From positions 59,235,386 to 59,299,385 of the forward strand of contig NC_068990.1 of the NCBI RefSeq assembly GCF_001194135.2: a DNA stretch of 64,000 nt, given 5' to 3'. The number at the start of each line of letters is the position of its first letter. Positions within the stretch are counted from its first letter, which is position 1. Below, piece after piece: positions 4,731 through 57,914 of the stretch. Origin of the DNA: Octopus bimaculoides. Taxonomy: Eukaryota. The notes under the pieces were generated by a model. It was given only the letters and a program-made list of their open reading frames with translations. It was not told where the DNA came from and searched no databases. The translations under genes were made by a program, and so were the position numbers.

Positions 4731-5261
4731 GATATATATATTGTAGAGTAAGTGGATGTGTGGTAAGTAGCTTGCTTACCAACCACATTGCTGCGAGTTC
4801 AGTTCCACTGTGTGNNNNNNNNNNNNNNNNNNNNNNNNNNNNNNNNNNNNNNNNNNNNNNNNNNNNNNNNNNNNNNNNNNNNNNNNNNNNNNNNNNNNNN
4901 NNNNNNNNNNNNNNNNNNNNNNNNNNNNNNNNNNNNNNNNNNNNNNNNNNNNNNNNNNNNNNNNNNNNNNNNNNNNNNNNNNNNNNNNNNNNNNNNNNNN
5001 NNNNNNNNNNNNNNNNNNNNNNNNNNNNNNNNNNNNNNNNNNNNNNNNNNNNNNNNNNNNNNNNNNNNNNNNNNNNNNNNNNNNNNNNNNNNNNNNNNNN
5101 NNNNNNNNNNNNNNNNNNNNNNNNNNNNNNNNNNNNNNNNNNNNNNNNNNNNNNNNNNNNNNNNNNNNNNNNNNNNNNNNNNNNNNNNNNNNNNNNNNNN
5201 NNNNNNNNNNNNNNNNNNNNNNNNNNNNNNNNNNNNNNNNNNNNNNNNNNNNNNNNNNNNN

Positions 5262-8559: not shown

Positions 8560-9198
8560 TGAAAATCTCCCATGGGTATGAATTTCAAAATGAAGATGGT
8601 AAAAGCTGCTGAAATTTTCAAGATATTTGAATACAAGATCACTTCTTTATCAAGCACAGTGGGAAACCATTTTGTCTCATCTGCCTAGAAAATAGCATTG
8701 TGAAGACTAGGAAATAATAGGCAGACATTATAAAATCTGTCATAATGAAAATTTTAACAAGTTTATGGGGCTGGTGAGAAGAGATGAAGTTGAGTGACTG
8801 GAAGCTAGTTTTAGAGAAGTGACATCACTTACAGCATAAATAAAAGAAATATTTGAGTCAACTAAAAATTTTCAAAACGTTTTGCAGAAAAGATGAAATC
8901 TTTTAGAGACGGTGTTTGTCAAAAAATGTTTGCTGGCAGTAGCAGATAGGGTTTATCCTGAAAAGAAGTTTTTTTATTTGCATATAACAGCCTGTTTGCA
9001 AGATTGATTACATGACGAGTTGAAGAAACTTCAGCAGATTTTAAAAATTTCTCTGAGGGACACTTGCAGCCAGCTGCAATTTTTTGTTTTTCAATTGCAC
9101 TTGATGAGAGTACAAACTTGAGAGACACTGTTCAACTTGCTATGTTTGCGCAGGCAGTGACCTTAGATTTTCAAAATTTTTAAACTTTGAAAATAATA
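8560..9198 (+). mobile_element. hAT transposase remnant (SPIN/GTF2IRD2-like)
   Basis: Fragments FIKHSGKPFCLICLE, KSFRDGVFVKKCLLAVAD and FSIALDESTNLRDTVQLAMFA; boundaries approximate. Confidence 0.75.
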
Positions 9199-9474
9199 CA
9201 GTTCTATATTTAAGAGATGAAGAATTATGTACATTATTTACATTTGACGAATATTTGTCTTCATCTTGTTTGTTGTTAACACAACGTTTCGGCTGATATA
9301 CCCTCCAGCCTTCATCAGGTGTCTTGGGGAAATTTCGATCCTGGGTTCTCATTCCTAAGGTATTTTTCGATGTTGTTATTATTATTATTATTATTATTCA
9401 GGTCACTGCCTGGAATCGAACTCGGAATCTTGGGGTTAGTGGCCCGCGCTCTTAACCACTACACCATATGCCCA
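9199..9474 (-). mobile_element. tRNA-headed SINE-like element carrying a hammerhead ribozyme module (copy 1, intact core)
   Basis: A box TGGTGTAGTGG, B box GAGTTCGATTCC, internal (AAT)n, then about 180 nt shared with the copy at 27058-27339. Abuts the end of a hAT remnant. Confidence 0.85.
9278..9323 (-). ncRNA. minimal type-I hammerhead ribozyme
   Basis: GACAC-CUGAUGA-A-GGCUG(GAGGGUAUAU)CAGCC-GAAAC-GUU-GUGUU: stem I GACAC/GUGUU, perfect 5-bp stem II, palindromic AACGUU stem III. Confidence 0.75.
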
Positions 9475-9677
9475 TATAATGACAAATATTGCAAATAGTG
9501 AAGAACAGAGTTAGCAAATTATTTTAATACTTTAGTTACACCAGTTTCATCATTATTTAATATAATCAGTCTTGCATAATGCTGTAATCATTCCAGCAAC
9601 TATTGATTAATATTTATATGCTATGTATGTTTGAATTATTTCTATTTTCCCCATTTTCTCTCTTTTCTGTTTTTTAG

Positions 9678-9989
9678 CTTTCATCTATGCGACTGCTGCA
9701 TTGGGTCCTGTTGTTGGTTATGCCCTTGGAGCTCTACTCTTGCAGTTTTATGTTGATTTGTTTTCCTACAATGTTTCTCTGACCCCTTCAGATCCTCGTT
9801 GGATTGGGGCCTGGTGGGGTGGCTTCATCATCTGTGGAGTAGTTCTAATCCTTATGTCCCTTCCATTTTTTGCATTCCCAAAAGTCCTCAGTAGAGAAAA
9901 GCGCAAAATTTTGGAAAACAAAAGCAAAGAGCTTCTTCTTAATGAGGAAGATCAGGTAGCCAATAAAGAATATGGCCGAACCATAAAAG
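9678..9989 (+). CDS. SLCO: SLCO/OATP organic anion transporter (SLCO5A1/3A1-like), first exon visible in window (internal exon)
   Basis: Acceptor ttttag|CT, donor AAAG|gtaagt. Encodes (A)FIYATAALGPVVGYALG...DPRWIGAWWGGF...FFAFPKVL, including the OATP signature DxRWxGAWWxGF. Earlier exons were not found in 1-9677. Confidence 0.95.
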
Positions 9990-11379
9990 GTAAGTTATTA
10001 ATATTTACTGCTCTTTCACCTCTCTTCAGCTCCATTATTGGTAAATATTATAATAATTTTTTTCATTTATATACATAAATACATGTATTTTTTTTACTTC
10101 TTTATTTAATTATCAAAATTTCTTCCTCTGAAGAAGGTGCTGGTTTCTAACAAAGATATAAAGCTCCATCTATGGAATGTAGGTAAAGACAACAATGTTA
10201 CATTTTAAACCCAAGGAAAGTCTTGCATAGATTTTACTGTTCTATTTACAGATTGTATTTGTAATGTGTGAGTCAGTTGGTCGATTTCTTATTCTGAAAA
10301 TCCTACCTTATCCAGACTGATAGTTATGTATTTATGTACAAAAACCAAGTGCACCAATTATTATTGGTACAAATGTAAATTTGTAATCCAGATATAAAAG
10401 CTGGGGATTTCAAAGCAGTTTATGCATGGATGGATGGATCGATGTATGGATGTGTATAATTATGTATGTAAATATGATTGTGTATATGTGTATCATCATC
10501 ATCTTCATTTAACATCCATGTCCCATGCTGCCATGGGTTGGATGTTTTGACAGGATCTGATGGGTCTAAGGACTGCCTCATGCTCTAGTGTATGTTTTGG
10601 CATAGTTTCTACAGTTGGATTCCTTTCCTAATGACAACCACTTCATAGCATGGACTGAGGGCTTTTTTTTCATACTGCTAGCACTAGTGATGTTGTGGTG
10701 CAGTGCACATAACTAAAGAGATATCCTGGGATGGGTGGGGCACATTGGCAAGAAAATTATAAAGAAACTGATAGTTGAAATAACGCTTCATAGTATTTAT
10801 TGTCAAAGCTGCACAGACACTCCTTTGTTGGTTTTGTCATCAAAAATGCAATAAACCAATGTTGGTGCATTGCAAACCTGTAACAGAATTGTGCTCTTGT
10901 TTACAAAGGACATGATATATAAACAGTACAAAATAAAAATATAGTATAGATACAACACCAACTTTTCAGGTGCTGATAGTCTAGAACCTCTTATAATCTG
11001 CTCTGATTTAAGAGCAGGAATTTCAAAATCCCATGGCTGTCAGATCAGTTTACTGAGTGGCCCTGTTTCACAGTACCTTGCACAGTACAGTATTAATAAA
11101 CTTTATACTAATGTACAAGTACTTATATTTCATTTAATTATTTAAGTAAATTTTGCATTTAATTTAAAGGTGACCACCCCCGGTTTGGAAAAATCAGTAA
11201 CTTGGAATGGCTTTGGAAGCAAAGGTTCCAGAAAATCAATGTTATATACCTGGTGTTATGTATAAAGCACTGGTGATGGTGCCACATAGCAAGCACCCAG
11301 TATACTCTGTAAAGTGGTTGGTGTTTGGAAGGGCATCCCACTGTAGAAACCATGCCAAAGTAGACAGTGGAACCTGATG

Positions 11380-20237: not shown

Positions 20238-21346
20238 ATATACAAGATGTGGTGAATAAATTGTTGTCTAAATTATACAAAAATAAAAATAACACTGACA
20301 GAGTAAATTTATTCACTAAAATTGCTATTGGCTTCAACCATGGTCTCCAGATGACTTCGGAATCTCCTGCAACTCTCCTGGATGGTCTCCTTGTTAAGGT
20401 TGGTGAATGCTGCCATTATCCTTGCCTTCAGTTCATCTTTGGTGTTTCAAGGAGTTTCGTTGGTCTCTCGCTCAGCTGTGCTTCACCAAGGGGTTTGCAG
20501 TCTGGGGAGTTAGGTGGCCAGATGTTAGGGGTGATGTGGTCACAGAAATTGTCTGACAACCATAATTGGGTTCTCTTGCTTGTATGGCATGGTGCAGAAT
20601 CCTGTTACCAGACATAGGATCTTCCAGCAGCCACCCAGAGCAGCACTACCTCTTCCAGGCATTTGATGTAGGCCTCCATGTTGAGTCTGAGGCCATGTGG
20701 GAAGATGAATGGAAGTATAACGTCGCCATCACTAGTGATCACTCCAAATACCATAATGTTGACTGGATATTTGATTTTTATCACTCTCGGTGCATGTTTT
20801 TGGGACACGGTAAGCTAGTGGTTGTTCTGTGTGTTCACCATCTGATCCTGGCAGAGATTTTTCTCGTCTGAGAAAAACCAAAGCATGTTCATTTGCAGGG
20901 GATGCTAGAGTTTGTTCAAAAACTTTATAGCATGGTCTTTCCTCTTGTCTGTGATGGCTTGGGACAAAAATTGTCCCTTTCTCATCTCGTATGAGGAATA
21001 CCGAATGTCTTCATGCACTATCTACCTGATAAGAAAATCAGATACTCCCATATCCCTGGCAATGGACCTGATTGACTTGGAAGGATTGTTGTCAATCATG
21101 GTCTGGATCTCACCAACAAATTCGGGAGTTCTTTTGTTATCAGAACGATCAGGGTGAGTTTTGTGAGCTGCCGTACCTTCGTAACCTTATCCAACTCTTT
21201 CCAAATCCTCTGCACTGTCCTCAGAATGACACCCAAGCACTCTGAAATGTTCATATTGGTGCTTCTGGTGCAAATGCTAAGCAGAACAGCATGTTATTTC
21301 CAAATTTCTGGCAGAGTGAATTGCTGTTTTTCTCACAGATGATGCC
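20238..21346 (-). mobile_element. degenerate Tc1/mariner-superfamily transposon (maT/DD37D-like)
   Basis: IMVFGVITSDG...WQQDSAPCH...WPPNSPD motifs with stops and frameshifts; 5' end lost in or near the gap at 21347. Confidence 0.8.
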
Positions 21347-22731: not shown

Positions 22732-22952
22732 AGCAGCGAGCTGGCAGAAACGTTAGCACGCCAGGCTAGTGGTATTTCATCTGCTGTTATGTTCCGAGTT
22801 CAAATTCTGCCGAGGTCGACTTTGCCTTTCATCCTTTCGGGGTCAATAAATTAAGTGCCATTTACGCACGGGGGTTGATGTAATCGACTTAGTCCCTTTG
22901 TCTGTCCTTGTTTGTCCCCTCTGTTTAGCCCCTTGTGGGCAATAACGAAATA
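22732..22952 (+). mobile_element. Nin/Deu-type SINE family B inserted in a family A SINE (other copies at 26415-26612, 30545-30750, 43255-43870)
   Basis: GAGCTGGCAGAA head and GCCTTTCATCCTTTCGGGGTC core; 14-bp TSD AGAAACTGAAAGAA at 22718-22731 and 22953-22966. Confidence 0.85.
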
Positions 22953-25068: not shown

Positions 25069-26626
25069 GTTAATGTAATTCGATTTCATTTAATTAAACC
25101 CTTATGATTATTATGTATGTTTACAGTTGTTGGAGTCATTTTGTAATGAAGTTAAACACGCAGTTCAAAATAAAGGGAAGAAACTGTTACCAGTTAAAAG
25201 AGTTAGTTCCCTTCGTATTTGATTGCGTGTAAGACGCATACATTTTATCCAAAAAAATCATCGCAGGTCCTGTGCAAAGTTTTGCCTCCTATAAGTTTTA
25301 ATATACTAAAAAAATTTTCCTGAGTATGCGCTGCAGAAATTAGAAAGCATATTATCAGTACCGTCTTCAGTGGCCTCACACAGGCCTATGTATGCTGGGA
25401 CTTGTCTCTAAATAAATACTATAGGGCCCACTACATAGATTTGCTTAGGAGCCTACAATGCTGCTAGGACAATATACTCCTCTCACTTTCAGTGTCTTCA
25501 TGTTCTGGTCAAATATAAAAACTGAGTAGGAGAAAAAAAAAATCTATAAGCCCCTGAGGCTGGATGCTGACTGTAAAGAATAAATAAATGTTATTCCTAA
25601 AAATTTCCAGCAACTTCATATTATTCTATCTTTAATGATCTAAGAATGATAAAAAAGATTCTATATAGTAAACGTTTTCTTTTATATTCAGTGACAACCA
25701 TTTCGACTAATACTAGTAATCTGTAATGTTCTTGAGAAAAGTTTGAACATCACACAGTCCCATTTTAGGCACCATTTTAATCCTTACACAACTTTGACAT
25801 TAAGAAATATGTAAAAAAACCAAAAAAAAAAAAACAACCTATATTGACTTCTATATTTTAAAAATGAATGACATTCAATTGCTTTTAATTGATTGGTGCC
25901 GACATTCTGGGTTCATATTCTGATGATGTCAACTTTGTCTTTCATCCTTTCGGGGTCGATAAAAAAAGTACCAGTTAAATACTGGGGCCAACGCAGTCAA
26001 CAAGACCTCCTCCTCACAAAATTTCAGGCATTGTGCCTATAGTAGAAAGGATTATTATTATTAATATTATTAAGGCGGCAAGCTCACAGAATCATTAAGT
26101 GAAATGCTTAGCAGCATTTTGTCTGTCTACATTCTGAGTTCAAATTCTGCCTTTCATCCTTCCAGGGTTGATAAAATCAAATACAAGTAGAACACTGGGG
26201 TCAATATTATCAACTTACTTTGTCCCTGAAATTGCTGACCTTATGCTAAATTTGAAATCATGTCTTGCAGCTTATGGTACCATGCTATATGTTCTCTTCA
26301 ACTATCTAATACTTTCTCAATGATTCTGGCCATGCCAAGGAGGCAAGCGTTTGGCAACAGCTCTATTGTGCACCCTATTCCCATTTCTTTTATATTATTA
26401 TAAAGGTTGAGATCTGGCAGAATTGTTAGCACACCGGGTCGTCTGTTGCTATGTTCTGGGTTCAAATTCTGCCAAGGTTGACTTTGCCTTTCATCCTTTC
26501 ACGGTCGATAAATTAAATACCAGTCAAGTACTGGGGTCGATGTGATTGGTTGTCCTCCTCCCCCCAAAAAATCTAGGCCTTGTGCCTATAGTAGAAAGGA
26601 TTATTATTATTACTTTGTTTTTACAG

Positions 26627-26744: not shown

Positions 26745-27057
26745 GTCAGTGATATTTTGTTTCTCTTTAAAGATAATTAGTCATTATAAATCTTTATTTC
26801 ACTTTTTTGCATTTTTCAGGCATCTAATTAGAAAACATTGTTTATTTTAATTATATATTCTTTTACTCTTTTACTCATTACAGTCACTGGACTTCAACCA
26901 TGCTGGGGCATTCTTTTATTCTTTTAAGATGGTATGGTGTGAGTTACGGAAATTTGGTTGCTATTTCTAGTAGATTGAATGATCATCTAGTTGTTCTTTT
27001 GTGAACAGTAGCCTATGCTCTTGACCATTATGAGCCCATGCTCTTAACCACTACGCC

Positions 27058-27124
27058 ATATGGCATAGTGGTTAAGAGTGCAGGATACTAACCCCAAGAT
27101 TCTGAGTTCGATTCCAGGCAGTGA

Positions 27125-27174
<50 letters not shown>

Positions 27175-27339
27175 TCGAACAATACCTTAGGAATGAGAAC
27201 CGAAGTTCAAAATTTCTCCAAGACACCTGATGAAGGCCGGAGGGTATATCAGCTGAAACTTTGTGTTAACAACAAACAAGATGAGGATAAATATCCATAA
27301 ATAATGTACATAATTTCTCATCTCTTAAATATAGAACTG
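27058..27339 (+). mobile_element. tRNA-headed SINE-like element with hammerhead module (copy 2, more decayed)
   Basis: Same layout and sequence as copy 1. Hammerhead core at 27222-27267 has a stem II mismatch and GAAAC-UUU in place of GAAAC-GUU. Confidence 0.85.
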
Positions 27340-28797: not shown

Positions 28798-28972
28798 CAC
28801 TGGTCACAAGATAATGGAGGCAAACTTGACATCAGCTTGTAACTCTAACTGTGACTGTTCTCCAAATCACCTCGAACCAATCTGTGGAATAAACGGTATC
28901 ACTTATTTCTCACCCTGTCACGCTGGCTGTACCAATTATTACGTCAATCATAACAATGCATATCATTCCACA
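28798..28972 (+). CDS. SLCO: SLCO/OATP exon, Kazal-like extracellular loop
   Basis: atttag|C...ACA|gtaagt. [31 protein letters not shown] is the OATP Kazal domain. Confidence 0.96.
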
Positions 28973-29484: not shown

Positions 29485-31196
29485 ATTAAATAGCACAGTT
29501 AAGGCTGAGTTGGAATATTGCTTTCTTATTTCATACCACATTTGTTTTTTATTTTGAAAATGACTCTCCCCCACAGAGCTGTCTTAGTAACATTATAGGT
29601 CCCTGCACCATTTATTGCACTGGGCTCTAGTATTTACTTACTGATAACACACCACAGCATACATAGATCAGAACCAGGCCCCCTAGACCTGTGAGTGTAG
29701 CACTTCACATACTTTTTTTTTGTGGGGGGGGGGGGTCAGTTTCTGTCTCTTTTATCAACATAATGTTTTTCTTTCTAATTTGGTGCCTTTACCAAACCAC
29801 GAAGCACTTCTATCAGTGACAAACAAGCTTTTAGTGTGAAGTTTGTTCATAATATCTCTACTAGCTTTACATGATATATTTACAATACTTCTGAGACAAA
29901 TCATGTGGGAACACAGAAATATTTGATTCCAAAATATTTTTAGCTAACATAAGAATCTTCTCCAGCTTGGTGTCTTGTATTTTAATTAATCAGAGACAAT
30001 TACCAAACTCTGCTAATGAAGGATGTGCTCTGACTGGCTGACTTAATCTTGGTACTCAGAGAGAGAGGAAGAAGGTGAAGCCACTATGATTTTTTAATGG
30101 AGCTTCACTTCATTCTTGACTCTTTTCCTTGTTTCTGTACTGGTCAGTTGGTTAAGTAAAATAATTTTGTGATAGAAACTAGATCACTTCACTAATGATT
30201 GGTTCCATATCTAAACGGAAAATCAGTTTGAAATTTGAACCTGTCTGTATTTTAGGTCTGAGTTTCATAATCACGAAAGACATTTCATCTTGGAAATGTG
30301 TTTGTGGATTGCTGATGTGCATAGGCTTTGGAACAGGAGATGCAAGGGGTGCGAATGCATCCCCTAAACTTTTTGAGGAGCAATGAAAACACTTTGAACA
30401 TCACCAAAACGAATGAGTGTAAAAACATTTTTGGACTGATTTGAAACATTACTTTTCCCATTATTGAGTTTATCTGGTTTGATTGATGTGCAAGTGTAAT
30501 AATAATAATGATAATAATAATGATGATGATGATGATGATTATTGCAGTGAGCTGGCAGAAAGGTTAGCATGCTGGGTGAAATGCTTAGTAGTATTTCGTC
30601 TGTCTTTGCGTTCTGAGTTCAAATTCCGCTGAGGTTGACTTTGCCTTTCATCCTTTCGGGGTTGATAAATTAAGTACCAGTTGCATACTGAGGTTGATCT
30701 AATCAACTGGGCCCCCTCCCCACAAATTTTGGGCCTTGTGCCTAGAACAGAAGAAAAAAGTCATTAGCACGCTGGGCAAAATGCTTAGTGACATTATGTC
30801 CATCTCCACGTTCTGAGTTCAAATTCTGCTGAGGTCGACTTTGCTTTTCATTCTTTCAGGGTCAATAACAATCGACTGCCCTACCCTTTCCCCCAAATTT
30901 CAGACCTTGAGCCTATAGTAGAAAGGAGCAAGTCCTGGGGAGCAGAGTAAGTCAGTTACATTGACCCCCAGTACTCAACTGGTTCTTATTTTATTAACCT
31001 CAAAAGGATGAAAGGCAAAGTCAACCTCAGACCATGAAGATGGATGAAATGCTTCCAAGCATTTCGCCCAGAATGCTAATGATTCTGCCTTACAGTGTTT
31101 GTTTTGATATCAAGATCAAAAAAATTGACCATGTTCATTGAAAAATTTTGAACCTGGGTTTGCACCATCTAAGCATATTTTATTCCCACACCTATG

Positions 31197-36831: not shown

Positions 36832-37833
36832 CCCTTTCGTTACTAACCTGGCCGAAGAATTTTTTGATTCATAAGACTAACCCAGCCGTAGCCGGCCGAG
36901 CATACCCATTGTTATTTAAATGTATATTTGAACCCAAATCTCGTTAGTACATTCGTTAAAACACCTGATTTCACTTTGCAAACAGTTAAGTTATTGTCTC
37001 CGACATTGTTTGGTGTGATATTTGAACTCAGTGAATTTTGGAAGATATTTTTCCACATTTTTTGCGGCGTTAATTTTTTTCAACTTTAAAGATGGAGAGA
37101 AGTTTCATGCTATCAAGCAGTGATTCTGAATTTGAAGATTTTTCAACAGAAGATATGGAGATATCGAAGAAAAGAATGAATGAGCTACAAAAGCACGTGG
37201 TGAACGGTAATGAATCGGATATGTCTGTATCCGAAACTGAAAGCAGCGACGGCGACAGCGAGGATGATTTTACACCAGAAAAAGATTTTTAAAATATTTT
37301 TATGAGGAGACAGGGTCTACCCATAGTCTTTCTCAGGAAGTGAAACCTTTAGACTTATTTTTCATGCTTGTTTGAAATGATTACTACGGAAACAAACCGT
37401 TACGCAGAATGTAAACAAACCGGAAAAAAAAAAGATAGCTTGTGGTTTCCTGGAACTGTAGATGAAATACGGGCATTTTTTGCCATAAATATTATTATGG
37501 GTATTAGACAGTTACCCAGAATAACAAATTACTGGAGCGATCAGGAACCTTTTGGCGATGAATATATTTCCAGTATTATGAACGAGTACGATTCGTGAAG
37601 CTGAACCAATATTTACATGTGAGAGACACTAGTAGTACCCGAGAGACAAAAATTATGCAATAGAATTGATTAAGAACCCTTTCTTTAATTATGTTCCAAA
37701 TATCACATTAATATGTTGATAAATAAAAAAGTTACAGGTGTTTAATGAGACTAGTCTAAATTCATGATTATTTTAGAATTTAATTGAAACTCATGAGGGG
37801 TGTATTTTGGTCAGAAATATAGTAACGAAAGGG
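36832..37833 (+). mobile_element. internally deleted piggyBac element nested in a SINE
   Basis: TTAA TSDs (36828-36831, 37834-37837) and perfect 14-bp TIRs CCCTTTCGTTACTA. PGBD-like peptide ITTETNRYA...DEIRAFFAINIIMGIRQLPRITNYWS. The host SINE resumes after the right TSD. Confidence 0.92.
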
Positions 37834-39975: not shown

Positions 39976-42900
39976 CACTTTGCAAATCAGTCAGTCGAAA
40001 TGTTATTGATGACATTTTAAGTTCTTCAAAAGTATTTTCATTTGTTATAAAGTCGTAACTGATCAAAATACATCCATTTCCACCTATCTAAATAACATAT
40101 CTCTATACATAAAAAAAAAAAAGTATGTCCATTCAATGTTAACATATATCTTTACGTGTATATATAATATATATTGACGAAACAGTTTGGTTATGAGGAA
40201 AACAATTTTACTCAATGGCAAGTTATATTGTAATAGCAAAAGTCTGCAGCCCAAGCTAATAGGCTTTTATCTGTTTTATTGTTATTTTAGAAACAAAGGT
40301 CAACTTTGCCTTTCATCCTAAACAGGGTCGATAAATAAAGTACCAGTCGAGCTCTGGGATCCAATATAATCAAGTAACTCTTCCTCCTCCCCTTAAATTT
40401 GTGGCCTTGTGCCAACATTGCTCTTTCTACTTCTATTACAACAAACTCCATCTATGAATGTGCTTGAGTTTCTGTGTAATATAAAAATAGATAACTTTAA
40501 CGATAGTAGCTAGAGGTTATTCAAATTACAGCCCTTCATGAAATCCAACAAGGTTTTGCACCAAAAACCTGTTGAGCCTTGTCTGGTTTAGTAAATTTGG
40601 CCATTTCATGTAATGTCTAATTTGTTGTAGATTTTATGAAAGCTCTCAATGCTGTTTTAATAGTCATGCAAGAAGGTAGTCATTGTTAATATTTACACTT
40701 ACATAATTACCCACCAACAATGTATGAATATCTGTTGTTAGCTACCATTATATATAGTACAAGCATGGCCATGTGGTTAAGCAATTCACTTTGCAGTTGC
40801 ATGGTCCTAGGTTCAATTGTTGCACAGCACCTTGGGCAAGTGTCTTTATCTATGCTGTCAGGTTGACCAATACCTTGGTGAAAGGAATTTGGTCAATGGG
40901 AACTGTGGGGTATCCTGTTGTACAAATCAAGTCCAGTTAATCCTATGGGATAGATTGAATGCTGAAAGAAGGTAAAAGCACTTTACTTTGTTATGAATAG
41001 AGACCATACATCAACAATTGCTATTGATTCATTATTTATGAACTGACAGATGTTTTTTTTGTATGAAATTTTTCCAACAAAATTAAATGCCTCTAAAATC
41101 TAGCTTATTGATTCCACCGTAGGTCCATTTTTACATTTGATATTTTAGAATCATTTTAAATGTAACCCAAATGAAAATGAGAAATCAATTTGTACAACTA
41201 TTAACCTAGATTTTTTAGCTTCAGCATCAGTGGTTCTCAACTTTTTAAATACCCAGGCTANNNNNNNNNNNNNNNNNNNNNNNNNNNNNNNNNNNNNNNN
41301 NNNNNNNNNNNNNNNNNNNNNNNNNNNNNNNNNNNNNNNNNNNNNNNNNNNNNNNNNNNNNNNNNNNNNNNNNNNNNNNNNNNNNNNNNNNNNNNNNNNN
41401 NNNNNNNNNNNNNNNNNNNNNNNNNNNNNNNNNNNNNNNNNNNNNNNNNNNNNNNNNNNNNNNNNNNNNNNNNNNNNNNNNNNNNNNNNNNNNNNNNNNN
41501 NNNNNNNNNNNNNNNNNNNNNNNNNNNNNNNNNNNNNNNNNNNNNNNNNNNNNNNNNNNNNNNNNNNNNNNNNNNNNNNNNNNNNNNNNNNNNNNNNNNN
41601 NNNNNNNNNNNNNNNNNNNNNNNNNNNNNNNNNNNNNNNNNNNNNNNNNNNNNNNNNNNNNNNNNNNNNNNNNNNNNNNNNNNNNNNNNNNNNNNNNNNN
41701 NNNNNNNNNNNNNNNNNNNNNNNNNNNNNNNNNNNNNNNNNNNNNNNNNNNNNNNNNNNNNNNNNNNNNNNNNNNNNNNNNNNNNNNNNNNNNNNNNNNN
41801 NNNNTATATATATATATATATATATATATACACGCACACATACACCTGTGTTTGAGTAATCTTCAAGGTATACATTCATAAGACATCATAGTCATATTTC
41901 ATCACCATGGCAAAAATGATCACACTGGATGATAAGACCTATATGCTTTAAGTTGATGTCCTACAAGGTGACACATTGGAGCTCTTCATCTTCTTTCTTT
42001 GTGGTTATGAACTATGAAGAACAAGGTTTCATCATTATACCAAAGTCTAGGAGGGTTGGGTCAGGGACACAGTCCGATCTAGGTTTTGTCAACAACATTG
42101 CTTCGCCATCTGATAAAATTACAGATGCTAAGGCTAAGGTTCTGTCAATAATAAAATCTGGATATAAGAAAAGCTTCACCTCAATGCCAAGAAAAGACAA
42201 TACATGATCTCCAATAGCTGATCACAAGCCACTGAGAGCTGCTGGAAGTATCTCATTCAATTTCTAATGCTAGAAATCAGAATCTAGCTTATGTGTTGGG
42301 GCCTGGAAAGAATCATTCAAAGTGGATAGAAGCCTTGCATGGAAACTGCTCATGAATACAAAGAACATTTGGATGTTCAACTTTTCCAAACATCTTAAGA
42401 AGAGACTCTTCATAGAAGTGATTGAAACAACTCTCCTTTATAGTTGTAAAACTTGGTCCTTCACTCAGTCAATGACAGCTTTGATTGCTGAAAGTGATTA
42501 ATGAGCAAGTCTATGGTAATTTCTCCCAGTTGACCAACAAGAAAGAAGGAAGGAAGGTAGCTGCTATCTGCTGGGTATTGTTTGAGACACCCAAAGTTGC
42601 CCTCCTAAGCCGAGTCATTGCCTGGAAACTAGCCCATGGGAAGATGAATTGTGGGTGTCTTTCTAAAAACAAAATCAAGCTTTGATAAACTTTGGACATT
42701 AATAATGATGGGATTTGTAGCACATCCATCATTGCAACTTGTAGGTATGTGTGTGTGTTGAGTGTTATAGGGATTCAAAAACTTAAAAAAAAAAATTTTT
42801 TTTAAACTAAAGATAAGAAAATTGGTGAGCTGGGTACGGCTGAAACTTTTTTTTTTTTTGAATACTGCCCATTTTTCTTGTTTAAGCTACAAAGCAGCTC

Positions 42901-43715: not shown

Positions 43716-44844
43716 GTCTATATATTCTGAGTTCAAATTCTGCCAAGGTCCACTTTGTCTTTCAGGGTTGATAAAACGAGTCCCAGTTGAGCATTGGAGA
43801 GAAAGGGTCAATGTAATCGATTTTGCCCTTCCTCTGAAATTACTGGCCTTGTGCCAAAATTTGAAACTTTTATCTCTAATACAGGCACAAGGCCAGGATT
43901 TACAAGGGGAACAGTCGACATTATCAACCTAATACTTTACTGTTTGTTTTTTTATTGATTTTAGAAGGATGAAAGGCAAAGTTGTTGACCACACAGAGAT
44001 CAGAACACGAAGTTCAAATCTTGCTGAGGTCAACTTTGCCTTTCATCCTTCCAGGTTCAATAAAATAAAGTACCTGTCAAATAATAAGGTTGATGACGTC
44101 GACCACTTCCCTTCCTCTCAAAATTGCTGGCCCTGTGCCTAAATCGGAAACCACTGATATTTTCTATCACACAATTAAATGATGTAATTTGGATTACAAA
44201 GAAACTAGTGATGGCCTGTCAGCAAATACCATGAGTACATAAAGAAGAGATGAGTGTGGAATCTGGCATTTCAGGCCCTGGCCATTTGTCAGAGTAGAAA
44301 GGGGAAAGTTGTAATGTTTGAATGGACTATAAGGCCTGAAATGTTAGCTTTTTTTTTCTCTCTGGTGTGCTTAGAACATTTAATTATTATCTGAAATCAA
44401 ATCCTGCAACAACCAATTCTGCCTTTAAGGATAAATAAAATGAATTACCAATCAAATACTGGGGTCAGTATAATCCACTGGCAGAATCATTCGCTGTATT
44501 TCATCTGTCTTTACGTTCTGAGTTCAAAATCTGCTTGAGGTTGACTTTCATCCTTTCATGGTTGATAANNNNNNNNNNNNNNNNNNNNNNNNNNNNNNNN
44601 NNNNNNNNNNNNNNNNNNNNNNNNNNNNNNNNNNNNNNNNNNNNNNNNNNNNNNNNNNNNNNNNNNNNNNNNNNNNNNNNNNNNNNNNNNNNNNNNNNNN
44701 NNNNNNNNNNNNNNNNNNNNNNNNNNNNNNNNNNNNNNNNNNNNNNNNNNNNNNNNNNNNNNNNNNNNNNNNNNNNNNNNNNNNNNNNNNNNNNNNNNNN
44801 NNNNNNNNNNNNNNNNNNNNNNNNNNNNNNNNNNNNNNNNNNNN

Positions 44845-44876
<32 letters not shown>

Positions 44877-47131
44877 GAAATTATTGTAAAATCATCAGTG
44901 GTTATTATAAGTCACTAAAAAAAAAAAAAGCTCCCCTTTGGTCATGAATGACCACGGGACTGCACCCAGAAAGTTCCCCTCTGAGGTACAAATCTAGGCA
45001 AGGTTGTTTATGGAAGACCAGCAGTCACCTATGCATACCAGTCTTTCCTCTCCATGCCACTGATGTTATCCAAGGGAAAGGCAAAGGTTGATACAGCTTG
45101 GCAGCAGTGATGTTGCAACTCATTTCTACAGCTGAGTGAACTGCAGCAACATGAAATAAAGTGTCTTGCTTAAGAACACAACACACAGCCCAATCCAGGA
45201 ATCAAATCCACTACCTCATAATTATGAGACTGATATTCTAACCACTGAGCCATGCACCTTCACATTACTTTAGTAACTTTGGATCTTTTTCCAACACTAA
45301 ACACTGACCACTAGATGGAGGGAAAAAATAGAGGGCTGGGGCTTGATTTGTTGCTTGATAAAATGCCTAAAACTGTAATTAAAACTTTTAATGAATGTAG
45401 ATGTCTCATTCCTCTTTCTTCTGGTGGATATCAGTTACAAAATTTAGTTAATTTAATGAATGGTTCTGTCAGTGTATTATTTGATCAACAGAAACTACAT
45501 TCATGGTAGCAGTTGCATGTACATTTTATATATATATATACATGAAATTATTGTAAAATCATCAGTGGTTATTATAAGTCACTAAAAAAAAACTGTAAAG
45601 AAAACAGTTTCAGTAGGATTTATAATTAAAACTTACAAGCAGGATTCTTTGTTAATATCAAATAGCAAGATAACGAACTGGCAAAATTGTTACCACACAG
45701 GAAAATTGCTTAGCAATATTTCTTCCAACTTTACATTCCAAATTCAAATACTGCTGGTATAGACTTTACTTTTCATCCTTTTGGGGTTGATAAAATAAGT
45801 CCTGAAAATATCTAAGGGAAGACATCATTGAAGAATCATGGAAGGTATTATTGAGAAATCCTGAATAAGTCAAGCATCAAAATTAGACCCACCTTAGTCT
45901 AGTTCGAGACCTCACATTGCACTTTGACTCATTCATCCTGTGTTTGATAAACCTATTTGCTTTGTTGGTACTCTAAATGAATGGGAGTAAAACCACTTTT
46001 AGGACAGAATGTAAAGATGACAGAGCAGTTTTTACAGGAAACCTGTTCAACTTGCCTGTGACTGACGTCCAACAATGGTCAAAATGAGGGACGCTCATGT
46101 ACCGTGGTAAAGAAAATCTACAAGTCTAGTGTCTCACTAGGACTGAAATTTAATGAAATAGAGTTGTCTCCTCTCCATTGCACAAAAATTTATCCCAATT
46201 TTATATTTTCTTTTTAACTCTAGCATTTAGATTACTCTGTCAGATGAAGTACTTATTTATTCACATTGTTTTGAATTAATTAATCATGGCTCATCTTGTA
46301 GCTGTGAGATTGTTTATTTTTAGAATGTCATTGAAGGGTAGGTGTGACAGGCTAAATCTGGGCAATTTGAACAAATAGAATGTTTGGGCCAGTTTAAATA
46401 TATATTTATTTGCTATTCTGCTACTTGTTTTAGTTAATTGACTGCAACCATGCTGGAGAACTGGTTTTTAGTCACAGAATTCAAATCCAGGACTTATTCA
46501 CTGTAAGCCTATTACTTATTTTGTCGGTCCCTTTTGCCTAACCACTAAGTTACAGGGACATAAACACACCAACATTAGTTGTCAAGTGATGGTTGGGGGA
46601 CAAACACAAATAAATATATATATATACGATGGGCTTCTTTCAGTTTCCACCTACCAAATCCACTCATGAAGCTTTGGTCAGCCCAAGGCTACAGTAGAAG
46701 ACATTTGTCCAAAGTGCCAGGCAGTGGGACTGAACCTGGAACTGTGGTTGGGAAGCAAGCCTGCATATTTTAAAAACTGAAGTGTTGAAAATAAAATAAG
46801 TAAATGAATAATCAAGATTATTGCAGAAATATATTTTCGTGGTGGAATTTCTTTTCTATTAGTAATCTGTAATATCTACACATTGACAAAAATGAAATAA
46901 CAGTAACGTGAAATAAATTTGATAAATATTTATTTAAAGAAAAAAAAATCTAATACAAATAATTTTGTTTATATTTTGTCAGATTGTACTGACATTTATA
47001 TCTGTACATTATTTTTATGTTGTGTTGCCAAGTCGTTGTGTTTTACAGGGAAGATATATATACATATATAAGCATCTGTTACAAACTGACTGCCTCAAAC
47101 TCTTTATAGTCGTTATTACCATTCTACATGT

Positions 47132-56639: not shown

Positions 56640-57914
56640 TTGGGTTGCCAAGAAAGTAATTTCGGTTTTTTAGTATGAAATAAAAGTCATTCTTTTATGT
56701 ACAAAGAATGGCCGTTAATAAATTATACATTTTCTATTTTGTTCGATGACCTTTTGCCATTTTCCTGGCAACTTCATGATTCCGCACTCATAGAACTTCT
56801 GGTCCTTATTCAGCCAAAAACTAAAGCAAGTGCAATTTCAGGTCATCATCATTATTGAAAGTTTTACCATACAAAGTATTTTGCAAACTTCAAAATAAAT
56901 GGTAATCTGATGGTGCAAGGTCAGGGCTATATGGTAGATGTGACAACACTTCCCAACCAAGCTCCAATAATTTTTCACGAGTTAGCAAAGACGTGTGTGG
57001 TCTAGCGTGGTCATGATGGAATACGATTCCTTTACAATTTACCAATTCTGGCTGTTTTTCTTTGATTTCTTCCACCAGTCTTATTAGTTGTTGACAGTAA
57101 ACATCTGAATTGATCATTTGGTTCCTTGGAAGCAACTCAAAATACACACCACCTTTGTAATCCCACCAAATTGACAGCATGACCTTTTTTTGATGCAATC
57201 CAGCTTTCAATGTGGTTTGTACTGGTTCATTATGCTTGGATCATGATCATTTTCGATTGATGCTATTGTAGACAATCCATTTTTCATGACCAGTGATGAT
57301 TCGTTTAAAAAGAAAGATCAATTTCATTGCATTTGAGATGCATACTGCAAATATTGATTCACTGTGTTAAGTGAATCTCTTTCAATTTATGTGGAACCCA
57401 AATAGCAAGCTTCTTAACGAGCCCAAGACAGTTTAAGTGATTTTCAATTGTTGTGTGTGATATATTTAACCTCTCTGCAATCTCTCACACAGTTATATGA
57501 CAATCAGATTCAATTATGGTTTTGATTTGGTCATCATCAACTTCAGTTGGTCATCTTTGAGTGGAAAATCTCCAGAAAGGAATTTTTAAAACCATTTCTG
57601 ATGTATGTTCTTTTAAGCAATCAACACCATAAACTTCACATATCTCTTTGTGAGCCTCAGCAGCTTTCTTGCTGCCTTTACAGAAATAAAAAAGCAAAAT
57701 ATGGTGAAAATGTTCATTTTTTGCACTCCATGTTAAAATTGACACTGAACTAACAGCTGTAAACAAAATTACGTGCAATTTGCTTCTAAAGTAAGCTAAA
57801 AGTAATAACTATCAAATGTCAAAACGAAAAAAATCATAGCACTGACAAAAGTCATTCAAAAAAATTGTAACTCTATCTATTTGTGAAAAGCAAAATTACT
57901 TTCTTGCCAACCTG
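56640..57914 (-). mobile_element. near full-length degenerate mariner (DD34D)
   Basis: TIRs TTGGGTTGCCAAGAAAGTAATT / AATTACTTTCTTGCCAACCTGA about 1.27 kb apart. KVMLSIWWD...FHHDHARPH...YSPDLAPSDYHLF. Confidence 0.92.

What the first reader, a model, noticed from the sequence alone, without database searches (positions are those of the whole stretch)
9199..9474. Chimeric tRNA-SINE carrying a Penelope-type hammerhead ribozyme
Seen: on the minus strand a Pol III tRNA head (A box TGGTGTAGTGG, B box GAGTTCGATTCC) and an (AAT)n run are followed by a module of about 180 nt containing GACAC CUGAUGA A GGCUG-loop-CAGCC GAAAC GUU GUGUU (9323-9278). A second copy with the same layout lies at 27058-27339, so head and module move as one unit. 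The microsatellite is internal rather than terminal, and there is no poly(A) tail or clear TSD. Established: Penelope-like element pLTRs carry minimal type-I hammerheads with a very short palindromic stem III that cleave as dimers (here AACGUU). An extra A between A9 and G10.1 is a known functional natural variant, and GUU fits the NUH rule. Inference: this is a SINE that captured a PLE pLTR end and uses ribozyme cleavage (predicted between 9283 and 9282) and PLE enzymes to move. Known SINEs usually borrow LINE 3' ends, so a PLE-dependent ribozyme SINE would be an unusual system.
Basis: partly seen in the sequence, partly recalled or inferred. Interest (0 to 1): 0.9.

Follow-up and report, generated by a model that had tools for sequence, protein, structure and literature searches.

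The report
Octopus SINE carrying a hammerhead motif
Two copies of a roughly 275-base octopus jumping element combine a tRNA-like promoter with a small hammerhead-ribozyme motif of the kind found in Penelope-like retrotransposons; the motif is real, but a similar design is known from schistosomes and nothing here shows that the ribozyme drives movement.

Summary
Window 9199-9473 (-) and 27054-27339 (+) are two independent insertions, 83% identical, of one discrete element. It has a tRNA-like head with A and B boxes, an internal (AAT)n run and a body of about 175 nt. There is no poly(A) tail and no TSD.

Copy 1 carries a complete minimal type-I hammerhead at 9323-9278. It shows every hallmark published for Penelope-like-element (PLE) hammerheads. 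My descriptor found it once in the window and never in 400 simulated windows. Copy 2 and a third copy, a spurious Octopus bimaculoides UniProt ORF, keep the core but carry disabling changes.

- The cleavage site lies 84 nt inside the element, and all copies share the same ends. Cleavage therefore does not define the mobile unit and would cut the promoter off the 3' end.
- Descent from a PLE pLTR is plausible, because octopus has active Penelope families. I could not test it: the window holds no long RT or GIY-YIG reading frame, and no octopus genome was reachable.
- tRNA-derived SINE-like elements with hammerheads (Sm-alpha, Sj-alpha) and PLE-linked retrozymes are already described.

Verdict: a new variant of a known kind, of moderate interest.

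The parts
9199..9473 (-). SINE copy 1, full unit: head, (AAT)7 and body
   Evidence: The alignment to copy 2 breaks at both ends. Coordinates were verified.
9399..9473 (-). tRNA-like head of copy 1, with A box at 9466-9456 and B box at 9423-9412
   Evidence: Read from the sequence. Each box matches its consensus at 10 of 11 positions, with tRNA-like spacing. ARAGORN and the Rfam tRNA model do not match.
9378..9398 (-). Internal (AAT)7 microsatellite between head and body
   Evidence: The run has 14 units in copy 2.
9278..9323 (-). Intact minimal type-I hammerhead motif. Helix I is 9323-9319 with 9282-9278. The core CUGAUGA is 9318-9312. The bulged A is 9311. Helix II is 9310-9305 with 9296-9291. 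GAAA is 9290-9287. The palindrome ACGU is 9287-9284. H17 is U at 9283, and the predicted cleavage lies between 9283 and 9282.
   Evidence: It is the only descriptor hit in the window, with 0 hits in 400 simulations. The minimum-free-energy fold recovers helices I and II. The double-hammerhead fold scores -24.3 kcal/mol against -26.0 for two monomers.
9199..9277 (-). 3' part of the body downstream of the hammerhead; candidate recognition end for the reverse transcriptase
   Evidence: It differs from copy 2 at 6 of 72 aligned positions plus a 7-nt indel. The same 3' boundary is seen in copy 2 and, by inference, in P0024.
27054..27339 (+). SINE copy 2, full unit with (AAT)14 at 27129-27170, A box at 27061-27071 and B box at 27104-27115
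27222..27267 (+). Decayed hammerhead motif of copy 2. The core is kept, but helix II has a C-A mismatch, C11.1 has become U, and the helix III palindrome is lost (ACUU).
   Evidence: The same double-hammerhead structure scores only -9.4 kcal/mol.
27003..27066 (-). Inverted, internally duplicated fragment of the same head, joined head-to-head to copy 2 through the palindrome GCCATATGGC
   Evidence: nhmmer matches head positions 3-37 and 12-44 on the minus strand. The sequence is shown.

Best explanation
This is a family of tRNA-derived SINEs of Octopus.

Shown:
- The unit is a degenerate tRNA-like head with an internal Pol III promoter, then an (AAT)n run, then a body of about 175 nt.
- The body carries a minimal type-I hammerhead of the Penelope-like-element type.
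- The unit occurs at independent loci with fixed ends.

Inferred:
- The sense strand is transcribed by Pol III from the head through the whole unit to a T-run in the flank.
- The body was captured from the 3' end or pLTR of a PLE, perhaps by insertion into the (AAT)n tail of a simpler tRNA SINE. It now serves as the 3' recognition module for a PLE reverse transcriptase and endonuclease acting in trans.
- The hammerhead came along as part of that module. A monomeric SINE RNA cannot form helix III, so it stays uncut, and only uncut RNA can give a full-length copy. Cleavage is therefore not a step in mobilisation.
- The genomic copies here are old, neutrally decaying insertions. Only copy 1 still has an intact motif.
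For: Discrete unit:
- Two copies are 83% identical with unrelated flanks.
- A third copy in O. bimaculoides, P0024, appears to have the same 3' boundary.

Pol III features:
- The A and B boxes sit at element positions 8-18 and 51-62.
- Neither copy has TTTT on the sense strand, while AAAA does occur. Only 15% of 276-nt windows in this sequence lack TTTT.

Hammerhead:
- It is the single descriptor hit in the window, with 0 in 400 simulations.
- It shows all four hallmarks listed for PLE minimal hammerheads (PMC4209133).
- The majority sequence of the three copies equals copy 1's intact motif, except at the CpG site at position 11.1.

PLE link:
- In animals, hammerheads are reported in PLEs, Terminons, retrozymes and the schistosome SINE-like elements (PMC7761336, PMC6765202).
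- O. vulgaris has 30 recently active Penelope families and 893 unclassified SINE families with recent insertions (PMC13282606).
- The element has no poly(A) tail and no TSD, and an inverted partial copy sits at the 5' end of copy 2. These features are reminiscent of PLE insertions (PMC8557442).

Cleavage is not used to define the unit: the site is 84 nt inside the element and the ends are fixed elsewhere.
Against: - There is no sequence comparison with any octopus PLE, so the PLE origin rests on motif architecture alone.
- Only three copies were available. They show no compensatory changes, and the hammerhead is not significantly better conserved than its flanks (3/46 differences against 22/199 elsewhere).
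- Rfam hammerhead and tRNA models and ARAGORN give no match.
- The fold is not significantly more stable than shuffled sequence (z = -0.74).
- Head and module were seen joined in only two copies.
- Absence of TTTT is weak evidence. Shuffles of the element itself lack TTTT in 36-51% of trials.
Confidence: 0.5

Rival explanations
1. One reading: the ribozyme is an active step in the life cycle. SINE RNA is cut by hammerhead dimers, as in Sm-alpha multimers or retrozyme circular RNAs, and the processed RNA is the template for PLE enzymes.
For: - Copy 1 has an intact core, and the palindromic ACGU can form a 4-bp intermolecular helix III. The double-hammerhead fold is nearly iso-energetic with two monomers.
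- Schistosome SINE-like elements and retrozymes do use hammerhead cleavage (PMC6765202; PMC7229834).
Against: - There is no tandem arrangement. The two copies are about 18 kb apart, solitary and in opposite orientation.
- The ends of the element do not coincide with the cleavage site.
- Cleavage would separate the promoter-bearing head from the 3' end.
- PLE minimal hammerheads have very low activity in vitro (PMC4209133).
Confidence: 0.15
2. The hammerhead-like motif is a chance resemblance in a SINE body of LINE or unknown origin. The element is an ordinary LINE-dependent tRNA SINE.
For: - No Rfam hammerhead hit.
- The fold z-score is not significant.
- No covariation, and 2 of 3 copies have a broken motif.
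- A scan of many windows of a genome of roughly 2.7 Gb (my estimate of octopus genome size) gives a handful of chance descriptor hits by my arithmetic.
Against: - The descriptor hit has 5-bp and 6-bp helices.
- All four PLE-specific hallmarks are present, and chance gives no reason for them to co-occur.
- The motif sits in a repeated element rather than unique DNA.
- The majority sequence of the three copies restores the intact motif.
- The element has no LINE-type tail, neither poly(A) nor a terminal microsatellite.
Confidence: 0.15
3. Head and module are not one mobile unit. A PLE-derived hammerhead module has inserted independently and repeatedly into the (AAT)n tails of a simple tRNA SINE, because PLE endonucleases prefer microsatellites.
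For: - PLEs show an insertion bias for microsatellites (PMC8557442).
- The microsatellite is internal and its length varies (7 against 14 units).
- Most minimal hammerheads are dispersed single motifs (PMC4209133).
Against: - Both copies share the same junctions on both sides of the repeat (CCTG-(AAT)n-AACATCGAA).
- Head and body diverge to a similar degree, 13% against 8-12%.
- The window has no head-(AAT)n copy without the module and no module without the head.
Confidence: 0.12

Closest known systems
[quoted passage not shown]
   Same: A tRNA-derived Pol III promoter is followed downstream by a type-I hammerhead in a short, non-coding, high-copy retroposon. These are non-autonomous elements in a genome that also carries hammerhead-bearing PLEs.
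   Different: - Sm-alpha carries a canonical, efficient type-I hammerhead and often occurs in tandem arrays, from which cleavage releases monomers.
- The octopus element carries a minimal PLE-type hammerhead with no helix III of its own.
- It occurs as solitary copies with fixed SINE-like ends and has an internal (AAT)n run.
- Sequence homology between the two was not tested.
[quoted passage not shown] 2017)
   Same: [quoted passage not shown]
   Different: The motif is not inside a pLTR next to an RT/GIY-YIG ORF. It lies in a 275-nt unit behind a tRNA-like promoter. Homology to an octopus pLTR has not been shown.
Animal non-LTR retrozymes (PMC7229834; bioRxiv 10.64898/2026.07.22.740005)
   Same: These are small, non-coding, AT-rich, hammerhead-bearing non-autonomous elements proposed to depend on PLE enzymes.
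   Different: Retrozymes are tandem repeats delimited by hammerhead sites, have no promoter of their own (PMC7761336) and move through circular RNA. The octopus element is solitary, has a Pol III-type head, and its ends are not at the cleavage site.
Classical tRNA-derived SINEs with a LINE-derived 3' tail (for example mollusc SINEs, PMC4758252)
   Same: The composite has a head, a body and a tail, an internal A/B-box promoter and a modular origin.
   Different: The borrowed module carries a ribozyme motif that points to a PLE rather than a LINE partner. There is no poly(A) tail or terminal repeat, and the microsatellite is internal.

Membership tests
Hammerhead ribozyme, minimal type-I (PLE type) | Conserved core C3-U-G-A-N-G-A9 and G12-A-A14, with A15.1-U16.1 and H17 not G | tested here: met
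   Present in copy 1 and copy 2. The P0024 codons P-D-D and L-K are consistent with the core being kept.
Hammerhead ribozyme, minimal type-I (PLE type) | Helices I and II base-paired, closed by G10.1-C11.1 | tested here: met
   Copy 1 has a 5-bp helix I and a 6-bp helix II. Copy 2 and P0024 have U at 11.1, which is decay at a CpG site.
Hammerhead ribozyme, minimal type-I (PLE type) | [quoted passage not shown] | tested here: met
   Copy 1 has the bulged A at 9311 and ACGU at 9287-9284. The hallmarks are taken from PMC4209133. The palindrome is lost in copy 2 and in P0024.
Hammerhead ribozyme, minimal type-I (PLE type) | Match to a curated hammerhead covariance model (Rfam) | tested here: not met
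   No hammerhead family matches, even at E<=10 on 216 nt. By my understanding, Rfam type-I models expect a real helix III, so this says little against a minimal variant.
Hammerhead ribozyme, minimal type-I (PLE type) | Covariation supporting the helices | tested here: inconclusive
   With only three copies, every change is disruptive and none is compensatory.
Hammerhead ribozyme, minimal type-I (PLE type) | Self-cleavage at the predicted site | not testable with these tools
   This needs in vitro transcription of monomer and dimer RNA.
tRNA-derived SINE | Internal Pol III promoter: A and B boxes at tRNA-like positions | tested here: met
   The A box matches 10 of 11 positions at element positions 8-18, and the B box 10 of 11 at positions 51-62, in both copies.
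tRNA-derived SINE | Recognisable homology or cloverleaf of a tRNA | tested here: not met
   ARAGORN finds no gene, and the Rfam tRNA model has no hit at E<=10.
tRNA-derived SINE | Discrete unit at independent loci with the same ends | tested here: met
   The two copies have unrelated flanks. P0024 appears to share the 3' end.
tRNA-derived SINE | Target-site duplications and an A-rich or repeat tail | tested here: not met
   No shared flank k-mer of 7 nt or more. The element ends at ...AGAACTG with no tail.
tRNA-derived SINE | High copy number genome-wide | not testable with these tools
   No octopus genome is in reach. The metagenome, viral, prokaryote-genome and protein-library searches were all empty.
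PLE-derived non-autonomous element | Sequence homology of the body to the pLTR or 3' end of an autonomous PLE of the same genome | not testable with these tools
   I saw no RT or GIY-YIG reading frame by eye among window ORFs of 55 aa or more (no Pfam scan was run). No octopus PLE sequence could be fetched.
PLE-derived non-autonomous element | Active PLEs present in the host lineage | tested here: met
   From the literature only: O. vulgaris has 30 Penelope families with 329 recent insertions (PMC13282606).
Non-LTR retrozyme | Tandem repeats delimited by hammerhead sites | tested here: not met
   The copies are solitary, about 18 kb apart and in opposite orientation. The cleavage site is internal.
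Sm-alpha / Sj-alpha | Pol III promoter followed by a hammerhead in one short retroposon | tested here: met
   The layouts match (against PMC6765202). Sequence homology was not tested, and the hammerhead type and genomic arrangement differ.

The most novel reading that the evidence does not exclude
This would be the first clear case of a Pol III-driven tRNA SINE that rides on Penelope-like-element enzymes by means of a captured pLTR end. Elements of this kind, rather than truncated PLEs, would then account for part of the thousands of orphan, dispersed minimal hammerheads seen in animal genomes. The requirement for a dimer would keep monomeric SINE RNA uncut. It could even work as a dose-dependent brake, with RNAs cutting each other in trans when the SINE RNA is abundant.
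Probability: 0.25. Interest if true: 0.65.

Novelty: new variant of a known kind. Interest (0 to 1): 0.42.

Why it matters
SINEs are defined by the partner whose 3' end they borrow. All well-documented partners are LINEs. PLEs are a separate retroelement class whose non-autonomous dependants, the retrozymes, have no promoter of their own.

A tRNA-headed SINE with a PLE-type hammerhead module in a cephalopod would have three consequences:
- It would extend the schistosome precedent to a second phylum and to the minimal class of hammerheads.
- It would offer a concrete candidate for a PLE-mobilised SINE in a genome where SINEs make up about 12% of the DNA and most families are unclassified.
- It would give a testable alternative origin for dispersed orphan hammerheads.

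It also bears on annotation. One copy of this SINE is listed in UniProt as a protein (A0A0L8FV75_OCTBM).

Tried and rejected
Searches for more copies, all empty:
- Exact-pattern scans of metagenome contigs, twice.
- Scans of viral contigs, twice.
- A scan of prokaryote genomes.
- A profile search of 1.84 billion protein representatives, using the antisense ORF shared by both copies.
- A word-indexed protein search with the sense ORF. It gave one hit, P0024, which served as the third copy and identified the genus.

Attempts to reach octopus genomic DNA through proteins:
- OATP exon homologues gave only 1-kb Logan contigs of a relative that is 93% identical. These diverge upstream of window position 9601, so no empty or filled orthologous site could be called.
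- They also gave two 20-kb loci of distant molluscs, with no SINE.
- A mariner transposase search returned no protein above 82% identity and no contig identifiable as octopus. The one contig fetched from it (L016, 85.6% DNA identity to the window's mariner) holds no SINE.

Other checks:
- Rfam at gathering and at permissive thresholds, and ARAGORN, gave no hammerhead and no tRNA.
- A relaxed core scan of the window found no other structured hammerhead.
- nhmmer profiles of head and body found no further body copies, only weak tRNA-like heads of other SINE families.
- A literature search for sequence strings of the motif found nothing.
- The supplements held for the papers I checked contain no repeat libraries or sequence files.

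Rejected:
- Segmental duplication, because the flanks are unrelated.
- A retrozyme, because there are no tandem copies.
- A real protein-coding ORF, because the open frames lie in a repeat and have no homologues.

Not done: a systematic Pfam scan of all six reading frames for short PLE remnants.

Full report
**What is there**

On the minus strand, window 9473-9199 reads as follows:
- a 75-nt tRNA-like head, with A box TGGTGTAGTGG at 9466-9456 and B box GAGTTCGATTCC at 9423-9412;
- (AAT)7 at 9398-9378;
- a body of about 175 nt ending in ...TCTCTTAAATATAGAACTG at 9199.

A second copy lies on the plus strand at 27054-27339 with the same layout and (AAT)14. BLAST and MAFFT give 83% identity over 290 nt. 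Similarity stops sharply at both ends and the flanks are unrelated. These are therefore two independent insertions of one discrete unit, not a segmental duplication. nhmmer profiles of head and body find no further body copy in the window.

**The organism**

The window comes from an octopus. The sense-frame translation of the body hits a single protein in 5.8 billion, the UniRef entry A0A0L8FV75_OCTBM of Octopus bimaculoides. That entry is evidently a spurious ORF called on another copy of this SINE. An exon of an SLCO/OATP transporter lies 190 bp from copy 1. It is 99% identical in protein and 93% in DNA to short Logan contigs of a related species.

**The hammerhead motif**

Copy 1 at 9323-9278 reads GACAC-CUGAUGA-A-GGCUGG(AGGGUAUA)UCAGCC-GAAA-CG-U-U-GUGUU. 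Its parts are:
- helix I of 5 bp;
- the full core;
- one unpaired A between A9 and G10.1;
- helix II of 6 bp, closed by G10.1-C11.1;
- A15.1-U16.1 enclosing the self-complementary CG;
- H17 = U, with cleavage predicted between 9283 and 9282.

My descriptor for such minimal hammerheads found this one hit in the window and none in 400 Markov-1 simulated windows. Simple arithmetic from base composition gives about 1e-9 per position. That amounts to a few chance hits in a whole genome of roughly 2.7 Gb (my estimate), and fewer with helices this long.

It is in fact one of these published hallmarks.

The minimum-free-energy fold recovers helices I and II, but the fold is not more stable than shuffled sequence (z = -0.74). 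The double-hammerhead dimer scores -24.3 kcal/mol against -26.0 for two monomers. Rfam gives no hammerhead hit even at E<=10 on 216 nt. By my understanding its type-I models require a real helix III, so this says little.

**Conservation**

Copy 2 keeps the core but differs in three ways:
- GGCCGG replaces GGCUGG, giving a C-A mismatch in helix II;
- C11.1 has become U;
- ACGU has become ACUU.

The same dimer structure then scores only -9.4 kcal/mol.

The third copy, read through the codons of P0024 (...PKTPDDGWRVYQLKSCINNKQ...), keeps CUGAUGA and GGCUGG. It has a pyrimidine at the bulge, U at 11.1, A at 15.2 and a G-to-A change in helix I.

The majority of the three copies equals copy 1's intact motif, except at the CpG site at 11.1, where C is the likely ancestral state. 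All changes are disruptive and none is compensatory. The hammerhead differs at 3 of 46 positions between the two window copies. The head differs at 10 of 76, the pre-hammerhead body at 6 of 51 and the post-hammerhead body at 6 of 72. That is not a significant difference. This pattern fits neutral decay of inserted copies and says nothing either way about selection on master copies.

**SINE features**

- The boxes sit at tRNA positions, but ARAGORN and the Rfam tRNA model see no tRNA. The head is tRNA-like only by its promoter boxes and their spacing.
- The sense strand has no TTTT in either copy, while AAAA occurs. In both copies the first T-run follows in the 3' flank. Only 15% of 276-nt windows of this sequence lack TTTT, but shuffles of the element itself lack it in 36-51% of trials, so this is weak support for Pol III read-through.
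- There is no poly(A) tail, no terminal repeat and no TSD of 7 nt or more.

**How it most likely works**

The predicted cleavage site is internal, 84 nt from the 3' end. The copies share a 5' end at the tRNA-like head and a 3' end at ...AGAACTG. The mobile RNA was therefore the uncut, full-length transcript. Cleavage would detach the promoter-bearing head from the end where target-primed reverse transcription starts.

A minimal hammerhead that cannot form helix III as a monomer, and that cleaves poorly even as a dimer (PMC4209133), is the kind of ribozyme a SINE could carry without harm.

My best reading is that the body is a borrowed 3' module of a Penelope-like element, used for recognition by PLE enzymes in trans, and that the hammerhead came along with it. 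The internal (AAT)n suggests that the composite arose when such a module landed in the microsatellite tail of a simpler tRNA SINE. PLEs do prefer microsatellite targets (PMC8557442).

The PLE link has the following support:
- the motif architecture;
- the restriction of animal hammerheads to PLEs, Terminons, retrozymes and the schistosome SINE-like elements (PMC7761336, PMC6765202);
- the presence of 30 recently active Penelope families in O. vulgaris (PMC13282606);
- the PLE-like insertion features: no tail, no TSD, and an inverted partial head joined to copy 2 at 27003-27066.

It is not supported by any sequence comparison with a PLE. I saw no RT or GIY-YIG frame among window ORFs of 55 aa or more, only mariner-, Tc1- and piggyBac-like remnants. 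No octopus genome could be reached.

**Comparison with what is known**

- The closest precedent is the Sm-alpha/Sj-alpha family of schistosomes. These are tRNA-derived (tRNA-Gln for Sm-alpha), Pol III-type SINE-like retroposons in which a promoter is followed by a hammerhead (PMC2770079; PMC6765202). They carry canonical, active hammerheads and often sit in tandem arrays that the ribozyme resolves. The octopus element has a minimal PLE-type motif and solitary copies with SINE-like ends.
- Animal non-LTR retrozymes are hammerhead-bearing, PLE-linked non-autonomous elements. They are tandem, have no promoter and move through circular RNA (PMC7229834, PMC7761336, bioRxiv 10.64898/2026.07.22.740005).
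- Full-text searches combining octopus or cephalopod terms with hammerhead, SINE or retrozyme returned no paper describing a hammerhead-bearing SINE in octopus or other cephalopods, and searches for sequence strings of the motif found nothing. Repbase and Dfam could not be consulted.

**Verdict**

This is a new variant of a known kind, a hammerhead-bearing tRNA SINE, here with a PLE-type minimal ribozyme in a cephalopod. The PLE partnership is plausible but untested, and a role for cleavage in mobility is unlikely. Interest is moderate. The decisive work is a genome-wide consensus and an alignment to octopus Penelope pLTRs, neither of which these tools could provide.

Noticed in passing
window 27003-27066 (-): An inverted fragment of the same tRNA-like head, with an internal duplication of the A-box region, joins copy 2 head-to-head through the 10-bp palindrome GCCATATGGC (27057-27066). 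It could be snap-back synthesis at the 5' end during insertion. It recalls the inverted partial copies described next to PLE insertions.
   Followed up: partly
window 9665-9990 and 28818-28934 (+): These are exons of an SLCO/OATP organic-anion transporter gene: an OATP-domain exon and a Kazal-domain exon. Both SINE copies sit in its introns. Copy 1, with the intact hammerhead, is antisense to the gene. Copy 2, in sense orientation, has a disabled hammerhead. With n=2 this is only an anecdote, but it fits selection against active ribozymes in pre-mRNA.
   Followed up: partly
window 9280-9474 (+) and 27053-27265 (-); also 9143-9397 (-): The antisense frame is open from the hammerhead to the head in both copies (65 and 71 aa, Met plus poly-Leu). 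The sense frame is open in copy 1 and is annotated as a protein in UniProt (A0A0L8FV75_OCTBM). The antisense-frame profile found no homologue among 1.84 billion representative proteins, and a word-indexed search with the sense ORF found only that UniProt entry, so these are almost certainly spurious ORFs.
   Followed up: yes
window 56657-57808 (-), 20431-21010 (-), 37074-37595 (+): These are remnants of a mariner, a Tc1-like transposase and a piggyBac-like transposase. The mariner is 85.6% identical over 1.08 kb to a Logan contig (L016, SRR32934427).
   Followed up: partly
window 30611-30702, 30927-31030, 22792-22897, 26454-26543, 44015-44140, 45745-45800; L001 60-194: A different, more abundant short repeat, probably another octopus SINE family, occurs at least six times in the window and also in the related species' contig upstream of the OATP exon.
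   Followed up: no
window 9151-9163 (+): A 13-nt exact inverted match to the 3' end of the head (CAGGCAGTGACCT) lies 36 bp beyond the 3' end of copy 1. The nhmmer E-value is 2.8, so it is probably chance.
   Followed up: partly
window ~900-1350, 2400-2850, 4810-5260, 41280-41800, 44570-44850: Runs of N (2342 in all) are flanked by (TA)n and (TG)n microsatellites. These are assembly gaps at simple repeats.
   Followed up: no
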